Assembly: GCF_964204645.1 (NCBI RefSeq)
Contig: NC_134035.1
Location: 2,604,001 to 2,668,000, forward strand
DNA: 64,000 bases
Source: Tubulanus polymorphus
Lineage: Eukaryota; Animalia; Nemertea
Direction of reading: 5' to 3'
The notes under the pieces were generated by a model, which had not been told where the DNA came from, did not search any database, and was given only the letters and a program-made list of their open reading frames with translations. Every line of letters begins with the position of its first letter. The first letter of the stretch is position 1. This document shows positions 1 through 63,365 of the stretch, one piece after another. Both the position numbers and the translations under genes were made by a program.

Positions 1-1359
1 ATGTCAGATTGGATAGAGTCAATCCTGACAAAATAGTACTTGATTATAATACCGTATGTGGAGAATGGCATGATGATAACGGAAAAAAAATATTAAGTTC
101 GAAAGTGTTTTCTTGAGCTATTTTCTAATAGTCACAACACTAGCATTTTATCAATGGTTAATATTGGTCCTGATTCCGTAGCGCTAAGATACTGTGCTCA
201 GATAGTTTCTGCCGTATATGTGCCGGGTAAATGTATATATGTTACTTTGGAATTAATCGTACGTTTGTTATCATTTCCCGCGAGCCTGGGCTCTCGTCTT
301 CCAGTGACAAAAGCGCTAAATGTTATCTTGTATAGGTTTGTAGGCTTCTAAGTTGGAAGAATGTGCTGAACAATTTATTTAGGCTATATATCGAACATCA
401 TTATTCCAGCAAGTTGTCTTAGCCTGGTGTTCATATTTTCAAAAAGGACGAAAAATAGTAGGTTTAATTTTGGCTCATTAGGGGCACTGGGTACTTCGAA
501 AGGCTCATGAAACTCACTGGAATCCGGCTGTTATTTTCAGGCTTATTTCTCGTTATATTATTAACACCTTTGTTTAGTCGCGAGGTGCTGTAATATGTGT
601 ACATTGTATTTAAATTATAAATAATTGAAAAATTGCTGGGAAAAACGAATTTGATTTTGTTGTTGATTGTAGGAGATATTATTCACAGGATAGCGGTTGT
701 CAATTGACACCTGAAGATTCTATCAGCACCAAATTAAATTGAATATACAGTTAAACGACGTTGATACGATTCTGATAAAGACAAAATCCGTTAATTAAAT
801 CGTACGATGATTTCCAGCATTTCCCAAGTAAGATATTTATATCAATCCAGATTTTGATAATACAACAATATCACTTTCGCCCACAAGATTTGTATGAACA
901 AGATTCCAGTACTAGTTTATCCACACACGGGGGCCTGCGGTACAAACATTTACTACTGGTAGAATCACAGCGGTGGCTAAATTTGGAGAGGGGAGCTGTT
1001 GGGAATCAAGTAATTTATTTTATGCTATGGCCTTATTACAGTTCCACGATATTGTTCAGCTGCCTACTGGCGCGTGTTCAACCCAGTGCAGGAACCTAAG
1101 CTCAATGTAAATCCATTCAACAATAGAAAGACACAATGGTGGTTTTTCATAGTTGTTGATATCATTTACACGTGCTATTGATGACAATTGTGCTCCTGTT
1201 CCTGCTTCCTGAGGAACGACGTCTTTATGTTTTATGTGTTACTGTTCGTCTCCGTACTGTCCTGTACTGTTCCGTGTTTATTAATCCGTTCTATTTTTCA
1301 GGTTCTAATCCGTTTTATTTTTCAGGGCCGATTTCTCTGTCGAATTTCAACGTTTGCTG

Positions 1360-2160
1360 GAACAAAACTAATGTCCGAAAGCGTCAGCTCTCCGTCGCCG
1401 GTCACGTGTCGAGGATGTCAGACAAAGAGCCGGTCAGGAAATGGCTGACCTCTACACGCCCTCATACGGAACATGAAAACCAGGATGACGAGGCCTTACT
1501 CTCCCCACCTATCAACAGAGAGTGTGCTAGGTGACGTCAATGACGGGCAGATCTGTCGGATTGTTTGCAGTGAAAATGGAGTGGTAAAGCTGGACTGTCT
1601 ACTAGTATTCATTGATTCCTTTTCAGGAATTGCTTCGGGCAAAGATTTGTCTCTTGTCTTCCTTTGCGTTCTAGCATTCATTGATTCCTTTTAAGGGATT
1701 GCTTCGGGCGGGGATTAATTTCCCTGTCTTCCTTTGCGTGCTAGGATTCATTGATTCACTGTGGGATCGCTTGCATGCTAGCATTCATTGATTCCTTTTA
1801 AGGGATTGCTTCGGACAGGGATTAATTTCCCTGTCTTCCTTTGAGTGTTAGTATTCATTGATTCCCTGTGGGTTGCTTCGGGCAGGGATAAGTCTTGTCT
1901 TCCTTTGAGTGCTAGTGCGGGCAATCCAGTTGCGCTACTTTATTTTTGTCACAAGCAATCTTGCAGGTTTATCAGTTACTGACGTCACGCAGCACACCCT
2001 GTGGGTAAATGGTGAAAGTAAGGCGTCGTCATCCTGGTTTTTGTGTTCTGTGTGAGGGCGTGTAGAGGGCAGTATATTCCTGGCTGGCTCATTGTCTGGT
2101 GTTCTCGGCATGTGACCGGCGAAGGAGAGTTGTAAAGCTTTCGGACATTAGTTTTGTTCT
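1360..2160 (+). repeat. Long imperfect inverted repeat (arms ~1360-1606 and ~1911-2160) enclosing a tandem array
   Basis: GAACAAAACTAATGTCCGAAAGC at 1360 is the reverse complement of GCTTTCGGACATTAGTTTTGTTC ending at 2160. Similarity continues inward to the ACTAG/CTAGT borders of the array. Each arm carries a TGACGTCA (1532-1539, 1980-1987). Confidence 0.92.
1602..1915 (+). repeat. Tandem array of ~70-bp units (four near-full, one truncated)
   Basis: Units start at 1602, 1671, 1741 (37 bp), 1778 and 1848; consensus CTAGCATTCATTGATTCCTTTTAAGGGATTGCTTCGGGCAGGGATTAATTTCCCTGTCTTCCTTTGMGTG. Confidence 0.93.
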
Positions 2161-2711
2161 GTACCAGGTTTTCATCGCTCTTCTCTTTTTTCATTTCAGG
2201 ACTCCCAAGATGAAGAAGAAGATGCTGAAGGCGACTACAACGAAGACAATGTCGAAAAAAGAACACTGAACTCGGCAATATTGAAAGTTAAGTTGATATA
2301 CGTGTAAATTACGATATATGATACAGAAAGGATTGTGTAACTACAAAATATCATTCTTTTGCTCATTTCAGCTTAATCTGGAAAGGCCCAGCCGATACTA
2401 AACCCAGTTATCTCGAAAGGTAAGTTGACTTATATGGAATTTATTATGATTAATGCTATATATATGAAGAATTATGTATATTTCAAGATATTGTATAATT
2501 ACAGGATATCTTCTTTTACTCGCTAAGTAACATCTATAAGACAAGCTCAGCCTGAGATCAATTAGTCATCTAGATTCTACTGATTAAAACAGCCAACAAA
2601 AGATTCCATCTTGAATTGAACTCATCAACTATCACAGCTAGAAATCTAGATTCAGCCAGCATTGGTTTATCGCCCAATGATTGATTTCTTCTACAATAGG
2701 TGGAGCAGATA

Positions 2712-2882
2712 CAATGCGCGTCTTATATATAAACACTTATTCAGGAGCAGCAGAGACAATGCGTATATTATGAACACTTATTTAGGAGCAGCAGAGACAA
2801 TGCGTATATTATAAACACTTATTCAGGAGCAGCAGAGACAATGCGTATCTTATAAAACACTTATTCAGGAGAAGCAACGACA
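2712..2882 (+). repeat. Minisatellite, ~41-43-bp unit x4
   Basis: AAACACTTATTCAGGAGCAGCAGAGACAATGCGTATATTAT repeated. Confidence 0.9.
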
Positions 2883-4742
2883 GTAGAATATGTGAAGTAT
2901 TGATTTATTCTACGTATCACCTTTTTTCAAACCAGTCTGATGGGTACCATGAGTTTACAAAATTCATTGTCTATTTGAAGGGGTGGAATAAACTATAAAG
3001 AAAGAGTTTTAATGTTGATTAATGAAAATTGAAGTTAGGTAATTTGGGCTCTAGGCCTGAGAAGGAACTATTCATATTTGAATATTTCAATAAAATGGCA
3101 TCCTCCTGATTCTTTATATTGATTAGGCAAACTGTTTTTGATTTGTAAACAGATGAGTCATTAAAGTCCTTAAAGTTTGTTCTTGAAGTCTCATAAAATC
3201 TACGCTCCATTAATTCATCATATTGATCGCGTATAGCGTCTGGGTTCGACTCGTAGGTCAGTTGAAATACACTTAAACTGAGATATAGTATCGACAGGAT
3301 AGTTCAGATAAGCTTCATACATTAGTTAAACATAGCTTTGCATGATTTGTAATAATGACATAGTTTATGGGATGAATACTCTTTTAGTTTTTATGGTTGT
3401 GGGCCATAGACGTTTTTGTTTTATAGAGTCCATGATTGGATTGTTTTTGAAATACAGTCCACGTGTTTGAGGAGCTTACATAATAATTCCTCGAGCACAA
3501 ACCTGGCATTTTTTATAATTGTTGTATGAGAATAAATATGATTGTTTGAAATTCTTCATTTGTTTATTTAATTAGCTATTCTGAACTTTCTTTTCAACCG
3601 ATTTATTTTATTTTAGGGCCTAACATTTTTTCTGCCGAATTTCTGGATATTTTTCTCACAGAAATAAATAAATTTTTTGCGTACATTTGTGATGCATATT
3701 TTGTTGCGTCTTTTTCTTTCACCACAGTTAGTCATGTATTTTTAATTCAAATCATGGTTGAATTTCAAACCCATCATTTATCTATTACAAACTATTTTCA
3801 TTAGATTGAATAGGTTCGCGGATTTTTTACTTCATCATGTTTAGAAATATTTTGGGAAGGATTAGCCATGCATTTACAGTATCTGATGCTATAAACATCA
3901 TCGCTCCGTCATGCTGAGTTTACATTTCACATTCAACCAGTATCTACATGCAGCTGTACAGTGTGGCTGGAATAACAAGCTCACTTCATGTAGGCGAGAC
4001 ATGGGCATGGCACTTATTTGATCCCCTCCTCAAAACACTCAAAATAAAAAGTCAAACAGGCACAGGGTTTATCAAACAAGATGACAGAGAATGAATAATT
4101 ATGAAAGTGAAACCAACCAGTGTGTTTTGACAGATCAGAATGTCGGAAGGCGTCGTGGTAGGCCTATATAATGGTCTGCCGATCACACAGTCTATGGAAT
4201 AGACTGTCTATTCCATCGAATTTATCCATCTGTGCAAATAGAAGCCGGTATCTGTTGATGAATATAAGTCTCTATAAATGGACACGATTGTTAAGAGAGG
4301 AGATGAAGAGCTGTCAGTCGGTAGATGCGCCGGTTAATCAACTTCATTTGTGAAATCCTGATACTTTTTTGCAGACGGAATACGAATATGGTGAAATCGT
4401 TGTAGTGTAGCTACAGTGATTTTTCTATCAAATCGCTCACGTGCCACAGTAGAACAGCGAGCTGCGTCAGATTTAAACAGTCAGGTGCTGTCGCTAGATA
4501 TAACGATAGCGGTGAAAACGCGAACTAACATTTTACTCACTTGCCAGAGTCTTCGAACTGTTAGAACGGACACAATATTTACCGCAAAAAGACGTTCTTA
4601 TGACGTACAGCACTGATCGCTCTAACAGCGGGCCGGACTCGAGAAAAAATTATGAAATCCTTCAAACAGCATTAGAATTACAAACTAGCCAATTTTTCTG
4701 GTTGAAGATCAGTCAAATACGAAAATGGAGAGTGCTAAACAA

Positions 4743-4991
4743 ACTCACTCACTTACTCACTCACCAATTTACTCAATTAACTCTGGTCTCCTCTGGTATA
4801 CATACCCCTGTTTTTAGTCTATATCTCACACCTGACGATGATCTCTAGGTGAGATCGAAACGTCGTGTATTTTATATATTTCAGATTGTTCGAATTAATA
4901 AATTTCTTGTTTTTAAATTCTTTTAATTTGTAGATAGTGGGTTTTCATCTTATTATCCGTTCACCACGTTTGAGTGTAGTTATCGTTCTAT
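4743..4991 (+). mobile_element. Penelope-like element pLTR fragment (249 bp) with hammerhead, flanked by 12-bp TSD
   Basis: AGTGCTAAACAA direct repeats at 4731-4742 and 4992-5003; internal hammerhead core followed by AATAAA, as in PLE pLTRs. Confidence 0.72.
4828..4868 (+). ncRNA. Minimal type I hammerhead ribozyme
   Basis: ACAC-CUGACGA-U-GAUCUC(UAGGU)GAGAUC-GAAA-CGUC-GUGU: stem I ACAC/GUGU, intact core, 6-bp stem II, palindromic ACGU in place of stem III, GUC cleavage triplet. Confidence 0.8.
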
Positions 4992-5358
4992 AGTGCTAAA
5001 CAACATTTTTTGTTTGGCGAAAAGTGGAATTGTATTCATAAAAAAATTATTTTCACACTAGCCATCGAAATGGTCTTACTATTATTGAACGGGCGGGTGC
5101 GTGTTGCTTTTGGACACATTTTCGGTGGCTAATATTTCATCCACTTAGTTGAACTATGGATGACTAAATCCCGGCCCGGATTTTTAATTGATGGCGTCAA
5201 TTAAAGTGACTTTTCCAGCGGTGTGTCTCACTAGAATATTACTTGCTCCAGCTTGCGTCATTAATGACATTTTTTATTCGCCAGTTACTTGAAATTCTTT
5301 CTAAACGAGTGGAGAATTACAAAATAATTCTATCATTTTCGGCCCCCAAAAATATCGA

Positions 5359-5553
5359 TTTTAAAAACAAGAATTTATTTATTCAATCTAAAATATATAG
5401 AATACACGACGTTTCGATCTAACCCTAGAGATCATCGTCAGGTGTGGATCTCTAGGGTGAGATCGAAATGTCGTGTATTCTTTATATTTTAGATTGAATA
5501 AATAAATTCTTGTTTTTGAATTCTTTTAATCTGTAGATAGTGGGTTTTTATCT
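5359..5553. mobile_element. Inverted pair of Penelope-like pLTR fragments, same family as 4743-4991
   Basis: Minus copy ~5359-5446 abuts a 5'-truncated plus copy 5447-5553, making a palindrome with ~70-bp arms. Confidence 0.75.
5404..5445 (-). ncRNA. Minimal type I hammerhead ribozyme
   Basis: Minus strand ACAC-CUGACGA-U-GAUCU(CUAGGGUU)AGAUC-GAAA-CGUC-GUGU. Confidence 0.78.
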
Positions 5554-15000: not shown

Positions 15001-18000
15001 TACAGTGCTAATTAGGGTTTTCTGTTACTTCACAGATAACCCTATTGAGATTCACGTGTTTCTTATTATTATTATTTTATGTCACACTATTTTCACTAAA
15101 ATAACATAGGCTTTGTTGCCTTGCCGCTGTTGTTGATAAAATCCGTATGATATCCTTCAGCTCACTTCGATCTACAAATACTACAAATACGCCGTGCGTA
15201 TTTTGATAAATCAACATAACAAAAGCACAGTCGGGCCGCCGTAAACATCGAAAATTGGGTCCCATTCAATGAGGCGACATGTTTTTCTGAGTCGTCATCC
15301 CGAAATCCACAGGAGGTTGCCAGTCACTTCGATTATCGATTCAAGTGTAAATAAACAAATTCATTGCCGCAGGACTTCACATTCAGCCGCGGGTTTTCAA
15401 ACAGTAATTCATAACCATTACCCATTTTCCTCATCAAATCATATTTCCGATACACAGGAAATTTCCTGCTCTAGATTTTAAAAGCACTGTCGAGCCGTAA
15501 ACATCGAAGAATCGACGTGTGTCACCACATCGTCGTTCCGAGGATCAGCTGCGAGTTTCTCCTCATCATGAGAATCAAATCGAGTACAAATTAATTCATT
15601 ACTACCATTGATTTTGCTGCGGGTTTTAAGCAGTTAGTTTAATAATACCTATTTTTCTTTACTAAATTAACCGTGTATTTACTAAGATAAATCTTTAGTG
15701 TACCGGGGAGTCGTAGGCCTAAACTAAACATATAAGAGATGTAGCGGAGAAAAGCTGTTTTGTCAACGAGGCATCAAAATAAAAGATTATATTACTTTAT
15801 TCGGCCGCGGGCTTCAACCATTTATCAATACTCTATATTTCCTACAGTACATACCGATCATTGTCAAAGGTATTTACTAAATACAAGTATATAACACACT
15901 CAGATCCGTATGCTGGACTCACACTTGACATTCGGAGTAATGTCATTTATCAGGACATTAAAGAGAAGACTACTAAGGATACTACCTTGCATGACTACAC
16001 TTAAGTTAGACTGACTTTTTCCAAGATGAGGCGTTCCGTTGATTTCGGCCACATGTTTTCGTTCAGAGATAACTGCTGAGCCATTTGAGTGACTTATCAT
16101 TAATACTGTTTTCTAATAGCCTTGTTTAGTAATGGCTGATGTTGTAACTTATCAAATGCTTTGTCGAAATCATTAAGAGTAATAATAGCCTAACAGTAAA
16201 TTTTCCAGAGTCAAATAGTCAAATTTCCAGAGTCAAATAGGACCATCCGGTCCAGTTGTCCATGGTTTAAGTAGGTCTAATTGACTGTTTGTCGACCTTC
16301 CTCTTATAAAACTGTGTTAACCATTGAGCAGGATTCTAAGACTGTGCAGAAAACCCGTTATCGCTGCTTTGCAGCTATATTTTACGTTGCATTTTATCTT
16401 TTTCACAATTTCGTTGTCTAGATTTGAACTAATCACATAGAACAGTTCACAACACAGCGATTTAACAGATTCTCAACATATCATTCTCCATAGAATAGTG
16501 AAAAACCACTCATTTCATACACCGGCCAGTAGCATGAGGGGGTTGGGAGTTGGAGGCTGTTGCAAATATTCAGAACATCCGTTCAGTTCCGACTGAATTA
16601 AAAACAAACCCATACTTAAATATTTCTCATGCTGAAGGCCTAGTTATATTGATAAAATATTTTCTAAATTAATCAAAATCAGAGATGTAGATATTTCGAA
16701 CTCTCATCATCGTCGGGTGTCCATCTTTTTTTTTAGACCCGTCCTTCCCTGAAGTACATACGCAGTTCATTAACCAACTAAATCTGAAGGGCGAATAGAG
16801 GTCGAAATGAGTTGAACCCGAAACAGACGACAACCAACAACACATAACACAGCGGTTTAAATTTACGATCGGAAACACAATGAACGAGTAACAGTCTATA
16901 ATTCTGAATACCTCTATTTCATTGACGAACAATCAACGCGGATTCCCAGGTATTTATTTGACCGAACCGGCGGAATGTCTTCCTCATTCGCGTCTGAAAC
17001 CTTGGGAAAATTCGCGAAACTCGTTTTTGAGAGAAATTTTGCTGCAGTCCCCTTGTAACCTATCAAGGGAGGGGCAGCTGAAAATGTAATTTCTCTCAAA
17101 TAGACTTAATCCCAAACCAATGAAGCTCATATCGGAATTGTACATAAAAACTGCCAACGCTGATAATAGTAAAGAACCCGATTATTTTCAAATGGTTGCA
17201 CAGGCTGAGCTACATAGTCTGATTCAGGGAGGGCTGCAACCCCAAATATAGGGCATATCATACAATCAAAATTATAATTAAAATTCGCTAGTTACTATGT
17301 CATTTATCAACTTTATCTTAACCAACTTTTGAGCAACTGCCGCCCCAATATACAATGCCATTCGTCACCGGCCAGAACAAGACCCATGAATTCAAATTCC
17401 CTTATTTTCAATAAAAGAGTCAGAATTCTCTGATTTTCTTTGCAGCACGGGAAAAAATAAATCAGGGAATTCCATGATTTTCCCATTTAGAACCCCTCGA
17501 GTCAAACGACTTACTTTCATCGCGGTTGTCGAGTCAAAATCAACGAACGACCAATCGAAATAACGCGGACATTCAACTGTCTGATGCCACGCTTCGAAAC
17601 TGTCATATCTCGACGATAGTTCACCGACGGCCTCCTCGAATCCGAAGCCGCCCTCGACGAGCGAACAACTCGCCGCCGCTCCGGTTTCCGGCCCCGAGTT
17701 TGACGCCGCTGAAAATACGGGCAAACCGACCGACGGGGTCGGCGTCTGCCACACGTTGAAATCATCGACGATGTCGGAAAGTTCGGTGAGCTGTTGAAAA
17801 ACGTCCGGTAGATCTTGATCGTTCCGATCGGTCTGACTGGAATACGATAAAATCAACGCTTCGATTTCGTCTTTTAAATCAGCGTCGTGCACCTCGACGA
17901 CGTAGTCATCATCCATACACTCGTAGCTGGACGCCGGCGAGTGATATCCGCTATCCGTACCTCGATTAAACGCCGACGACGACGAGCAAGATTTCGTCGC

Positions 18001-18084
18001 GTTAAACCGACGACTACGAGTGACGAGTTCGATGGTCTCATCGTCCAAGTCGTCCAGCTCGTTGACGTCATCGCAAATTTCCAT
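8109..18084 (-). CDS. Nuclear hormone receptor, subfamily NR1 (E75/E78/ROR-related, probably a lophotrochozoan-expanded NR1 group); 6 coding exons: 18084-17515, 11440-11101, 10463-10249, 9645-9417, 8982-8758, 8350-8109; 606 aa
   Basis: C4 zinc-finger DBD CRVCGALASGLHYGVNTCEACKGFFRR...CPACRYQKCLEVGM; T-box SKKAIKTGRYT; LBD signature FVQFCKGLPGFKDLSIEEQTGMLKAGRFE; AF-2 PLWCEVF. All junctions are GT-AG with matching phases (0,1,0,1,1) and sum to 1821 nt. ATG at 18084 has Kozak context AACATGG. The link from exon 1 across a 6-kb intron is the least certain part. Confidence 0.92.
8991..9040. repeat. (TAA)n microsatellite in nuclear receptor intron 4
   Basis: Direct reading. Confidence 0.97.
10488..11058. 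repeat. Diverged tandem duplication (~270-bp units) containing pieces of the piggyBac-type MITE family seen at 14697
   Basis: GATGAATTTGATT...GATCTCAATGCATT...GGTGCGGTGTATCGACAGTTACT...ATTCATACAC occurs twice. Confidence 0.75.
12981..13338. mobile_element. PIF/Harbinger-type MITE (358 bp)
   Basis: Perfect 43-bp TIR AGCCTAGCGCACATCGACACTGCGATTGGAGACAACTAGTTGC, TAA TSD, internal CACATCGA sub-repeats. Confidence 0.9.
14697..14984. mobile_element. piggyBac-type MITE (288 bp)
   Basis: TTAA-CCCTTTCAGTGC ... GCACTGAAAGGG-TTAA. Confidence 0.9.
15870..16370 (-). mobile_element. Degenerate CR1/L2-type LINE reverse transcriptase fragment
   Basis: HSFIRGRSTNSQL, DFDKAFDKLQH and VMQGSILSSLLFNVLINDI motifs, broken by stops and frameshifts. 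Confidence 0.8.
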
Positions 18085-18189
18085 GTTCGACACAAATAAA
18101 AAACAATAATAAAGTTTTCGAAAACACTAACACTTCCGTCGATCAATAGGCGTGGGTGGTTTATGATTTAATGTTCGAGCCAGCGAGCG

Positions 18190-50299: not shown

Positions 50300-63365
<13,066 letters not shown>

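What the first reader, a model, noticed from the sequence alone, without database searches (positions are those of the whole stretch)
1602..1915. Tandem array of ~70-nt three-way-junction motifs with structure-preserving variation, forming the loop of the foldback
Seen: each unit folds on the plus strand as P1 CUAGCAUUCA/UGMGUGCUAG (the CUAG palindrome is shared with the next unit), P2 GAUUCCU-loop-AGGRAUU, linker GCUUC, P3 GGRCRGGGA-loop-UCCCUGUCU, linker UCCUU. Differences between units fall mainly in loops (UUUG, UUAAUU, UAAG; UUUC, UUUA, UGU) or are A/G swaps opposite U, while both linkers are invariant in the four full units. I recognise no known ribozyme or Rfam family. Inference: a repeated functional RNA or ssDNA module such as a protein-binding, packaging, processing or origin element. 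It is loosely analogous to baculovirus hr arrays of ~70-bp palindromic repeats.
Basis: partly seen in the sequence, partly recalled or inferred. Interest (0 to 1): 0.8.

Follow-up and report, generated by a model that had tools for sequence, protein, structure and literature searches.

The report
Branched tip of a repeat-borne RNA hairpin
The five short repeats are real and form the branched tip of an 800-base, one-strand-only RNA hairpin, but this is one worn copy of a protein-less repeat scattered over the genome, and no RNA could be examined.

Summary
The array is real: four full units of about 70 nt and one half unit at 1602-1915, at the tip of a fold-back spanning 1355-2165. As plus-strand RNA it folds far better than chance (z -7.7). 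The minus strand and single-stranded DNA do not. Only units 2 and 4 form the proposed three-way junction on their own; units 1, 3 and 5 pair with each other and frame them.

It is not a unique gene. The 314-nt array recurs at least 44 times in this 268-Mb animal genome, 23 times in full at 94-97% identity. It sits inside a large repeat with no protein match, and the window's copy is truncated and internally deleted. Other notes of this scan describe the same module at other copies.

Variants shared by several copies never create A.C mismatches in the array stems (17 to 0). Single-copy variants behave neutrally. Diverged subfamilies keep the closing helix and show compensated changes in hairpin P2. 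However, shared variants in the flanks are also strand-biased, so the G.U excess in the long arms may be mutational.

My best reading is a selected RNA structure serving the repeat itself. Its function is unshown. It matches no Rfam family, ribozyme or tRNA, and nothing in the viral or metagenome collections.

The parts
1602..1670 (+). Unit 1, the 5' half of the frame. Its P2 hairpin forms locally. Its P1 5' strand and its purine-rich half pair with unit 5.
1671..1740 (+). Unit 2, which folds alone as a three-way junction (P1 of 9-10 bp, P2 of 7 bp, P3 of 9 bp).
   Evidence: -27.0 kcal/mol, z -3.9
1741..1777 (+). Unit 3, a 37-nt half unit. In the fold of the whole array it pairs with the 5' part of unit 5.
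1778..1847 (+). Unit 4, which folds alone as a three-way junction. Together with the start of unit 5 it is the second copy of a 107-nt duplicated block.
   Evidence: -30.1 kcal/mol, z -5.8
1848..1915 (+). Unit 5 plus the closing CTAG, the 3' half of the frame. Its 3' end forms the outer 10-bp helix with the start of unit 1.
1355..1601 (+). Left arm of the fold-back, including the spacer next to the array.
1916..2165 (+). Right arm of the fold-back.
1532..1539 (.). TGACGTCA palindrome in the left arm (CRE-like; the naming rests on my own knowledge).
   Evidence: The right-arm copy is kept in most fetched copies of subfamily C; the left-arm copy reads TGATGTCA there.
1980..1987 (.). TGACGTCA palindrome in the right arm, the pairing partner of 1532-1539.
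967..3727 (+). The window's copy of the dispersed repeat. It is cut off on the left near 967, lacks about 110 bp near 1182, and carries a 4.4-kb internal deletion at 2390 relative to the copy on contig 4.
2724..2876 (+). A 41-bp tandem repeat (3.7 copies) that belongs to the same repeat element.

Best explanation
The array is the branched cap of an approximately 800-nt RNA hairpin encoded on the plus strand of a large, protein-less, gene-like dispersed repeat. Units 1 and 5 form a frame: an outer 10-bp helix (CUAGYAUUCA with UGAGUGCUAG) plus a long inner helix. Self-folding 70-nt three-way-junction modules sit inside the frame, one in the 3-unit copies and two plus a half unit here, after duplication of a 107-nt block. 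About a quarter of the pairs are G.U, so the RNA stays paired while the DNA is only a poor palindrome. The lineages of the repeat that kept multiplying preserved this pairing. That suggests the structure acts in cis on the repeat's own sense transcript, most plausibly as a module bound by double-stranded-RNA-binding or RNA-processing proteins. What is shown: the anatomy, the strand specificity, the copy number and the pattern of substitutions. What is inferred: transcription, folding in the cell, and any biochemical role.
For: Folding is specific to the plus strand. The array gives -124.4 kcal/mol (z -7.7) against -64.8 (z -1.4) for the minus strand. The whole fold-back gives -470.5 against -337.1. 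ssDNA folding is weak and the same on both strands. The array fold has 30 G.U pairs and no A.C in single-mismatch loops. Among 23 full copies, transitions shared by two or more copies at array stem positions all keep pairing (17:0; 16.2:0.1 with leave-one-out structures). Singletons split 14:7.5, as expected by chance. Against a null taken from the flanks (64% pair-preserving) the 17:0 result gives p = 5.6e-4, or 0.015 if two possible A.C sites are granted. Diversity at non-CpG sites is lowest in the array: 0.020, against 0.026-0.033 in the arms and 0.036-0.056 in the flanks. The 3-unit copies fold the same way, with one inner junction. Subfamilies B and C keep the arms and the closing helix and still fold only on the plus strand (-63 to -95 kcal/mol against -40 to -50). 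P2 differs between subfamily A and subfamilies B and C by two changes on both sides of a pair. Within subfamily C one P2 pair switches U-A to A-U in perfect linkage (15 copies against 6). Another pair runs U-A, U.G, C-G, and no shared variant breaks a pair. In the inner arms, 17 columns show changes on both sides across four subfamilies.
Against: No RNA data of any kind were available. The copies are 94-97% alike, so there is no change on both sides of a pair within subfamily A and only one between unit types. Shared variants in the non-hairpin flanks are also strand-biased (C>T plus A>G at 32 of 163 sites, against G>A plus T>C at 19 of 203; p = 0.006), while singletons are symmetric. Against that null, the arms' 34:11 excess of G.U over A.C (p = 0.076) and the whole hairpin's 36:16 (p = 0.28) are not significant. 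The array result rests on 17 sites and on predicted structures, and a tandem repeat gives a folding program freedom to avoid mismatches. Compensated changes in the long arms could come from DNA conversion between the arms. In the most numerous subfamily the three-way junctions are not kept.
Confidence: 0.5

Rival explanations
1. The structure is a neutral by-product. A short self-complementary unit was duplicated at the tip of an inverted repeat. The G.U excess arose from strand-asymmetric mutation (C>T and A>G on the plus strand) in the lineage that multiplies, for instance through transcription or a single-stranded RNA or DNA copying intermediate. Under this reading the structure has no role.
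For: Shared variants in the flanks carry the same asymmetry while singletons do not. In the arms, changes polarised with subfamily C as outgroup are 20 C>T or A>G against 10 G>A or T>C. With that null the arms are not significant. The plus strand is G+T-rich: 64% in the array and 58% in the hairpin.
Against: The remainder of the window's copy (2200-3700) is only 52% G+T, so the skew is concentrated in the structured part. The array shows 0 of 17 A.C-creating shared transitions where about 6 are expected. Transversions on both sides of a pair in the short P2 stem cannot come from a transition bias, nor from conversion between long arms. The array is also the least diverged segment.
Confidence: 0.25
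2. The array acts as double-stranded DNA. Under this reading it is a row of palindromic protein-binding sites: the 16-bp imperfect palindrome at each unit junction, the P2 and P3 palindromes, and the flanking TGACGTCA sites. It would serve as an enhancer or promoter element of the repeat.
For: Unit junctions and linkers are conserved in sequence, not merely in pairing (0 of 14 linker columns vary among the units here). The sequence of the closing helix is kept across subfamilies without covariation. Two TGACGTCA palindromes flank the array. Palindrome-rich regulatory regions are known in transposons, for example in maize Sirevirus LTRs (PMC4728375).
Against: At the DNA level the stems are poor palindromes, since about 26% of the pairs would be G.T mismatches. 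The one-strand bias and the switching between G.U and Watson-Crick pairs have no meaning for duplex DNA. The promoter-like 5' end of the repeat lies 0.9-5.5 kb upstream of the hairpin.
Confidence: 0.12
3. The hairpin forms in single-stranded DNA of the plus strand while the repeat is being copied, as in rolling-circle (Helitron or Helentron type) transposition, and acts there as a recognition or origin structure.
For: The repeat has one defined 5' end, with no inverted partner, at 262 sites. It carries several internal tandem repeats, as non-autonomous Helentrons do (PMC4067079). A single-stranded DNA intermediate would also produce a strand-specific C>T bias.
Against: With DNA energy parameters the array folds weakly and equally on both strands, and the junctions are not predicted. 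I did not find or search for a Rep/helicase partner. The 3' end, target-site preference and subterminal repeats were not established.
Confidence: 0.06
4. This locus is a unique functional RNA gene, such as a self-cleaving ribozyme array, a microRNA cluster, a tRNA-like array, or a host hairpin-RNA gene.
For: The only support is the strong fold and the unit size of about 70 nt.
Against: There are at least 44 copies of the array, and more than 140 units were found with the covariance model. No Rfam family matches at E <= 1 in 900-3800. ARAGORN finds no tRNA. The stems are 7-10 bp, too short for microRNA precursors. The window's copy is truncated and internally deleted.
Confidence: 0.02

Closest known systems
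Long hairpin RNA (hpRNA, endo-siRNA) loci, and engineered G:U hairpin transgenes
   Same: Both have a stem of several hundred base pairs on one transcript strand. In this window's copy 62 of 332 predicted pairs are G.U (19% overall; 26% within the array). Engineered G:U hairpins with 18-26% wobble pairs keep the RNA paired while disrupting the DNA inverted repeat (PMC9263138).
   Different: This is a multi-copy module of a dispersed repeat, not a single host gene. No small RNAs, targets or transcripts could be examined. The tip is a branched tandem array instead of a simple loop.
Palindrome-rich regions of transposons, such as maize Sirevirus LTRs
   Same: Both are families of mobile or dispersed elements with a conserved, complex cluster of palindromes able to form hairpins (PMC4728375).
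   Different: The Sirevirus palindromes lie in the regulatory part of the LTRs of a coding retrotransposon, and small-RNA data exist for them. Here the carrier has no LTRs within 20 kb and no protein match, and the structure is specific to one strand.
Foldback-type transposons
   Same: Both combine inverted repeats with tandem sub-repeats in a non-coding mobile element.
   Different: In foldback elements the inverted repeats are the two ends of the element. Here the whole fold-back is an internal 0.8-kb module, 0.9-5.5 kb from the 5' end and about 8-13 kb from the 3' region.
Baculovirus hr regions
   Same: Both are tandem units of about 70 bp with internal imperfect palindromes.
   Different: hr regions are duplex-DNA enhancers and origins in a virus genome (my own knowledge). 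Here the signal is specific to one strand of RNA, the sequence is a chromosomal repeat, and no viral contig matches.
Non-autonomous Helentrons (HINE, DINE-1)
   Same: Both are protein-less and dispersed, have a defined 5' end, and carry internal tandem repeats and palindromes (PMC4067079).
   Different: Subterminal inverted repeats at both ends, the short palindrome near the 3' end and insertion into TT were not shown here. The elements here are also far longer, more than 15 kb.

Membership tests
hpRNA / endo-siRNA gene | A long inverted repeat able to fold as one RNA | tested here: met
   The plus strand of 1355-2165 folds to -470.5 kcal/mol, z -33.
hpRNA / endo-siRNA gene | A single or low-copy host locus | tested here: not met
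   The array gives at least 44 matches in the genome, and related subfamilies give 146 candidates.
hpRNA / endo-siRNA gene | Transcription, and Dicer-dependent 21-22-nt small RNAs with targets | not testable with these tools
   No RNA or small-RNA data are held.
Self-cleaving ribozymes and other Rfam families | A match to a curated covariance model, for example a hammerhead core | tested here: not met
   cmscan of 900-3800 at E <= 1 gave only a chance snoRNA-like hit of 17 bits against a 36-bit cut-off.
Foldback transposon | The inverted repeats form the two termini of the element | tested here: not met
   Homology among copies continues for kilobases on both sides of the fold-back.
Baculovirus hr | Located in a large dsDNA virus genome | tested here: not met
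   The copies are spread over the contigs of a 268-Mb assembly, and viral contigs give no match.
Neutral minisatellite | Substitutions spread evenly over the unit, and variable copy number | tested here: not met
   All 23 full copies share the same five units, and about ten copies form a second, 3-unit class. Shared transitions in stems all preserve pairs.
Helentron / HINE | Subterminal inverted repeats, a 3' palindrome, insertion in TT, and a Rep/helicase partner | tested here: inconclusive
   The 5' end is defined at 262 sites. The 3' end was not reached. No partner was looked for.
tRNA or tRNA-derived array | A cloverleaf recognised by ARAGORN | tested here: not met
   No tRNA was found in 1-5000.

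The most novel reading that the evidence does not exclude
The repeat is a non-coding mobile or amplifying RNA-gene-like element that depends on a viroid-like, wobble-rich RNA rod. The branched tip would be a modular platform of three-way junctions, gained and lost in 107-nt steps, that recruits a host or partner protein needed for the element's spread or for evading dsRNA surveillance.
Probability: 0.15. Interest if true: 0.7.

Novelty: new variant of a known kind. Interest (0 to 1): 0.42.

Why it matters
If the pairing is truly selected, this is a repeat family of more than a hundred copies, with no protein match, that maintains a long one-strand-only RNA rod with a modular branched cap. It would be a natural counterpart of engineered G:U hairpins. 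It would also be a candidate for a new way in which a non-coding element uses RNA structure, in a phylum (ribbon worms, according to other notes of this scan) where RNA biology is almost unexplored. If the pairing is not selected, the family is still a clean example of how strand-biased mutation in the propagating lineage of a repeat can mimic selection on RNA structure. That is a caution for the many similar hairpin findings in this genome.

Tried and rejected
- Rfam scan of 900-3800 at a permissive threshold found nothing.
- ARAGORN found no tRNA in the window's first 5 kb or in the 3' repeat region of another copy.
- Folding as ssDNA gave weak, symmetric structures, so I set aside the ssDNA reading.
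- Pfam scans of the few open frames in the repeat and of the window's one long ORF gave no family. Other copies have no ORF of 100 aa or more apart from one of 111 aa on the opposite strand and two overlapping ones (161 and 101 aa) on the plus strand, inside the fold-back's left flank and arm, of which the longer was scanned.
- Self-comparison found no LTRs within 20 kb around six copies.
- A search for an inverted partner of the 5' terminal motif found none in the sequences I hold. In the genome the motif shows no nearby partners in opposite orientation.
- Pattern scans of viral and metagenome contigs for the closing-helix motif gave no hits.
- I tried to delimit the whole element. The left end was found, but the right end was not reached, because homology among subfamily C copies runs past the sequence I could fetch.
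- My first substitution test used an RNAalifold consensus, which is circular. I repeated it with leave-one-out single-sequence structures and then with a mutation null taken from the flanks. That removed the signal in the arms but not in the array.
- The species name given by other notes was not verified here.

Full report
**Observation.** The sequence at 1602-1915 is a tandem array.
- Tandem Repeats Finder gives a 107-nt period over 1664-1872 (92% matches) and a 64-nt period over 1776-1916.
- The two most conserved motifs occur 5 and 4 times there, against 0.34 and 0.03 matches expected in the whole window.
- Units start at 1602, 1671, 1741 (a 37-nt half unit), 1778 and 1848. A closing CTAG lies at 1912-1915.
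- The array sits between inverted arms (1360-1524 with 1993-2159, extending inward), so it is the tip of a fold-back at 1355-2165.

**Structure.**
- As plus-strand RNA the array folds to -124.4 kcal/mol, against -86.6 for shuffles (z -7.7). The minus strand gives -64.8 (z -1.4).
- The whole fold-back gives -470.5 on the plus strand and -337.1 on the minus strand.
- With DNA energy parameters both strands fold weakly and alike (-33.5 and -30), and the junctions disappear.
- Only units 2 and 4 fold alone into the three-way junction (z -3.9 and -5.8). Units 1, 3 and 5 do not.
- In the fold of the whole array, the 5' end of unit 1 and the 3' end of unit 5 form an outer 10-bp helix. Their purine-rich and pyrimidine-rich halves form a long inner helix. 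Unit 3 pairs with the start of unit 5. Units 2 and 4 are the two junctions inside this frame.
- The fold has 45 A-U, 41 G-C and 30 G.U pairs, and no A.C in single-mismatch loops.
- Among the four full units here, 18 of 52 stem columns vary, 7 of 10 loop columns vary, and none of the 14 linker columns varies.

**It is a dispersed repeat.**
- The 314 nt recur at 44 places in the window's own 268-Mb, 77-contig assembly. Twenty-three copies are full length at 94-97% identity.
- About ten copies carry a 3-unit version that lacks one 107-nt block. It folds the same way, with a single inner junction (-67.9, z -3.8; minus strand -38.6).
- A covariance model of the unit found 144 units in the genome.
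- Homology among copies runs for kilobases on both sides of the fold-back.
- The window's copy spans about 967-3727. It is cut off on the left, lacks about 110 bp near 1182, and has a 4.4-kb internal deletion at 2390.
- Fuller copies reach a sharply defined 5' end, a 29-nt motif found at 262 sites in one orientation per element. It is followed by two CCAAT motifs, a GCCATCTTCC motif, a CACGTG motif and a short ATG-led frame. Reading these as promoter-like rests on my own knowledge.
- That 5' end lies 0.9-5.5 kb upstream of the fold-back on the same strand. The distance varies because of internal deletions.
- The 3' region lies about 8-13 kb downstream and ends in a ladder of 76-nt repeats. The true 3' end was not reached.
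- There are no LTRs within 20 kb and no Pfam match. The longest ORFs are 161 and 101 aa on the plus strand and 111 aa on the opposite strand.
- The element carries several tandem repeats, one of which also forms long arrays elsewhere in the genome.
- I could not classify how it spreads.

**Is the pairing selected?**
- Within the 23 full copies there is no change on both sides of any pair, because the copies are too similar.
- I therefore compared variants shared by two or more copies, which passed through lineages that multiplied, with singletons, which reflect decay after insertion.
- At array stem positions, shared transitions all preserve pairing: 17 to 0 on an alifold structure, and 16.2 to 0.1 on leave-one-out single-sequence structures. 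Singletons split 14 to 7.5, which matches the 64% expected by chance.
- In the arms, shared transitions split 38.5 to 13 and singletons 44 to 31.
- I then asked whether a mutation bias could give the same picture. In the flanks outside the hairpin, shared variants are also strand-biased (C>T plus A>G at 32 of 163 sites, G>A plus T>C at 19 of 203; p = 0.006), while singletons are symmetric.
- Arm changes polarised with subfamily C as outgroup show the same 2:1 bias.
- With this asymmetry as the null (64% pair-preserving), the arms' 34 G.U to 11 A.C is not significant (p = 0.076), nor is the whole hairpin's 36 to 16 (p = 0.28).
- The array's 17 to 0 remains significant (p = 5.6e-4, or 0.015 if two possible A.C sites are granted).
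- The array is also the least diverged segment at non-CpG sites (0.020, against 0.026-0.056 elsewhere).
- The G+T skew is concentrated in the structured part: 64% in the array, 58% in the hairpin and 52% in the rest of the element.

**Diverged relatives.**
- The covariance model and a follow-up DNA search found two further subfamilies in the same genome: subfamily B (a few copies) and subfamily C (146 candidates).
- I fetched 25 arrays from these.
- They share the arms, the TGACGTCA site of the right arm and the outer closing helix, but the inner units differ.
- Subfamily B keeps one clean three-way junction (z -4.4).
- In subfamily C the tip is a nested, long-range rod and not a row of junctions. 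It still folds only on the plus strand (-63 to -95 kcal/mol against -40 to -50).
- Hairpin P2 has a different sequence in B and C than in A, with two pairs changed on both sides.
- Among 21 subfamily C arrays, one P2 pair switches U-A to A-U in perfect linkage (15 copies against 6). Another pair shows U-A, U.G and C-G. Three more columns switch between G.U and Watson-Crick pairs. No shared variant breaks a predicted pair.
- In the inner 150 nt of the arms, 17 columns change on both sides across four subfamilies. In long arms this could also come from DNA conversion between the arms.

**Comparison with known things.**
- No Rfam family matches at E <= 1, ARAGORN finds no tRNA, and viral and metagenome contigs hold no match to the closing-helix pattern.
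- The nearest known kinds are long hairpin-RNA loci and palindrome-rich regions of transposons (PMC4728375).
- The wobble-rich design parallels engineered G:U hairpin transgenes, in which 18-26% G:U pairs disrupt the DNA inverted repeat but keep the RNA hairpin (PMC9263138).
- It is not a foldback transposon, because the arms are internal and not terminal.
- It is not like baculovirus hr regions, because it is a chromosomal repeat with a one-strand RNA signal.
- Membership in non-autonomous Helentrons stays open (PMC4067079).

**Relation to earlier notes of this scan.** Other notes describe the same hairpin module and its branched tip at other copies, inside a protein-less repeat of 10-15 kb. 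They name the animal as the ribbon worm Tubulanus polymorphus. I reached the anatomy, the copy number and the strand bias independently, and I did not verify the species. My addition is the flank control. It shows that the arms' G.U bias need not be selection, whereas the tip's pairing signal and the P2 covariation survive that control.

**Verdict.**
- Confidence in each reading:

| Reading | Confidence |
|---|---|
| Selected cis-acting RNA structure of a non-coding dispersed repeat (best) | 0.5 |
| Neutral product of tip duplication plus strand-biased mutation | 0.25 |
| Duplex-DNA regulatory array | 0.12 |
| ssDNA structure | 0.06 |

- This locus is one decayed copy. Any interest lies in the repeat family, not in this place.

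Noticed in passing
window 745-908: A different short dispersed repeat of about 160 bp abuts the truncated left edge of the hairpin-bearing repeat. It has 370 first-look candidates at 70-78% identity.
   Followed up: no
window 2724-2876: A 41-bp tandem repeat (3.7 copies) in which each unit carries an acceptor-like TTCAG and a GT just after a 19-nt core. It belongs to the same repeat element, and other scan notes describe much larger exon-like arrays in this family.
   Followed up: partly
window 4753-4990 and 5357-5523: A high-copy repeat of about 240 bp, 89-92% identical at many loci. The stretch 5357-5523 matches itself on the opposite strand, so it is a 167-bp palindrome. This looks like a MITE.
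   Followed up: no
L035:4541-5300 and alignment A3: The repeat's 5' end is a 29-nt motif present at 133 forward and 129 reverse sites in the genome (0 in the reversed control), once per element with no inverted partner. CCAAT, GCCATCTTCC and CACGTG motifs and a 67-codon ATG frame with no Pfam match follow it.
   Followed up: partly
L035:5812-6023: A unit of about 212 bp inside the repeat also forms long tandem arrays elsewhere in the genome, for example on contig 10 near 13.1-13.8 Mb. This links the repeat to a satellite.
   Followed up: no
L040:9230-9656: The 3' region of the repeat is a 76-nt tandem repeat that holds a tRNA T-arm-like GGTTCAAACCC. Copies end in a ladder with 76-nt steps. In many subfamily C copies an inverted block of about 230 nt of the same units follows, which would make a second fold-back. 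ARAGORN finds no tRNA there.
   Followed up: partly
G000 contig 8, 14731622 and 14761358: Two copies of the repeat's upstream region lie 29.7 kb apart in the same orientation. On contig 3 six copies of the 5' motif lie 44-75 kb apart. Both suggest large segmental duplications that contain the repeat.
   Followed up: no
window 58977-59087 and 57733-57774: There are two perfect (AT)n microsatellites, of 55 and 21 repeats.
   Followed up: no
window 17392-18093 (-): This is the only ORF of 150 aa or more in the 64-kb window (233 aa). It has no Pfam family above the curated cut-off.
   Followed up: partly
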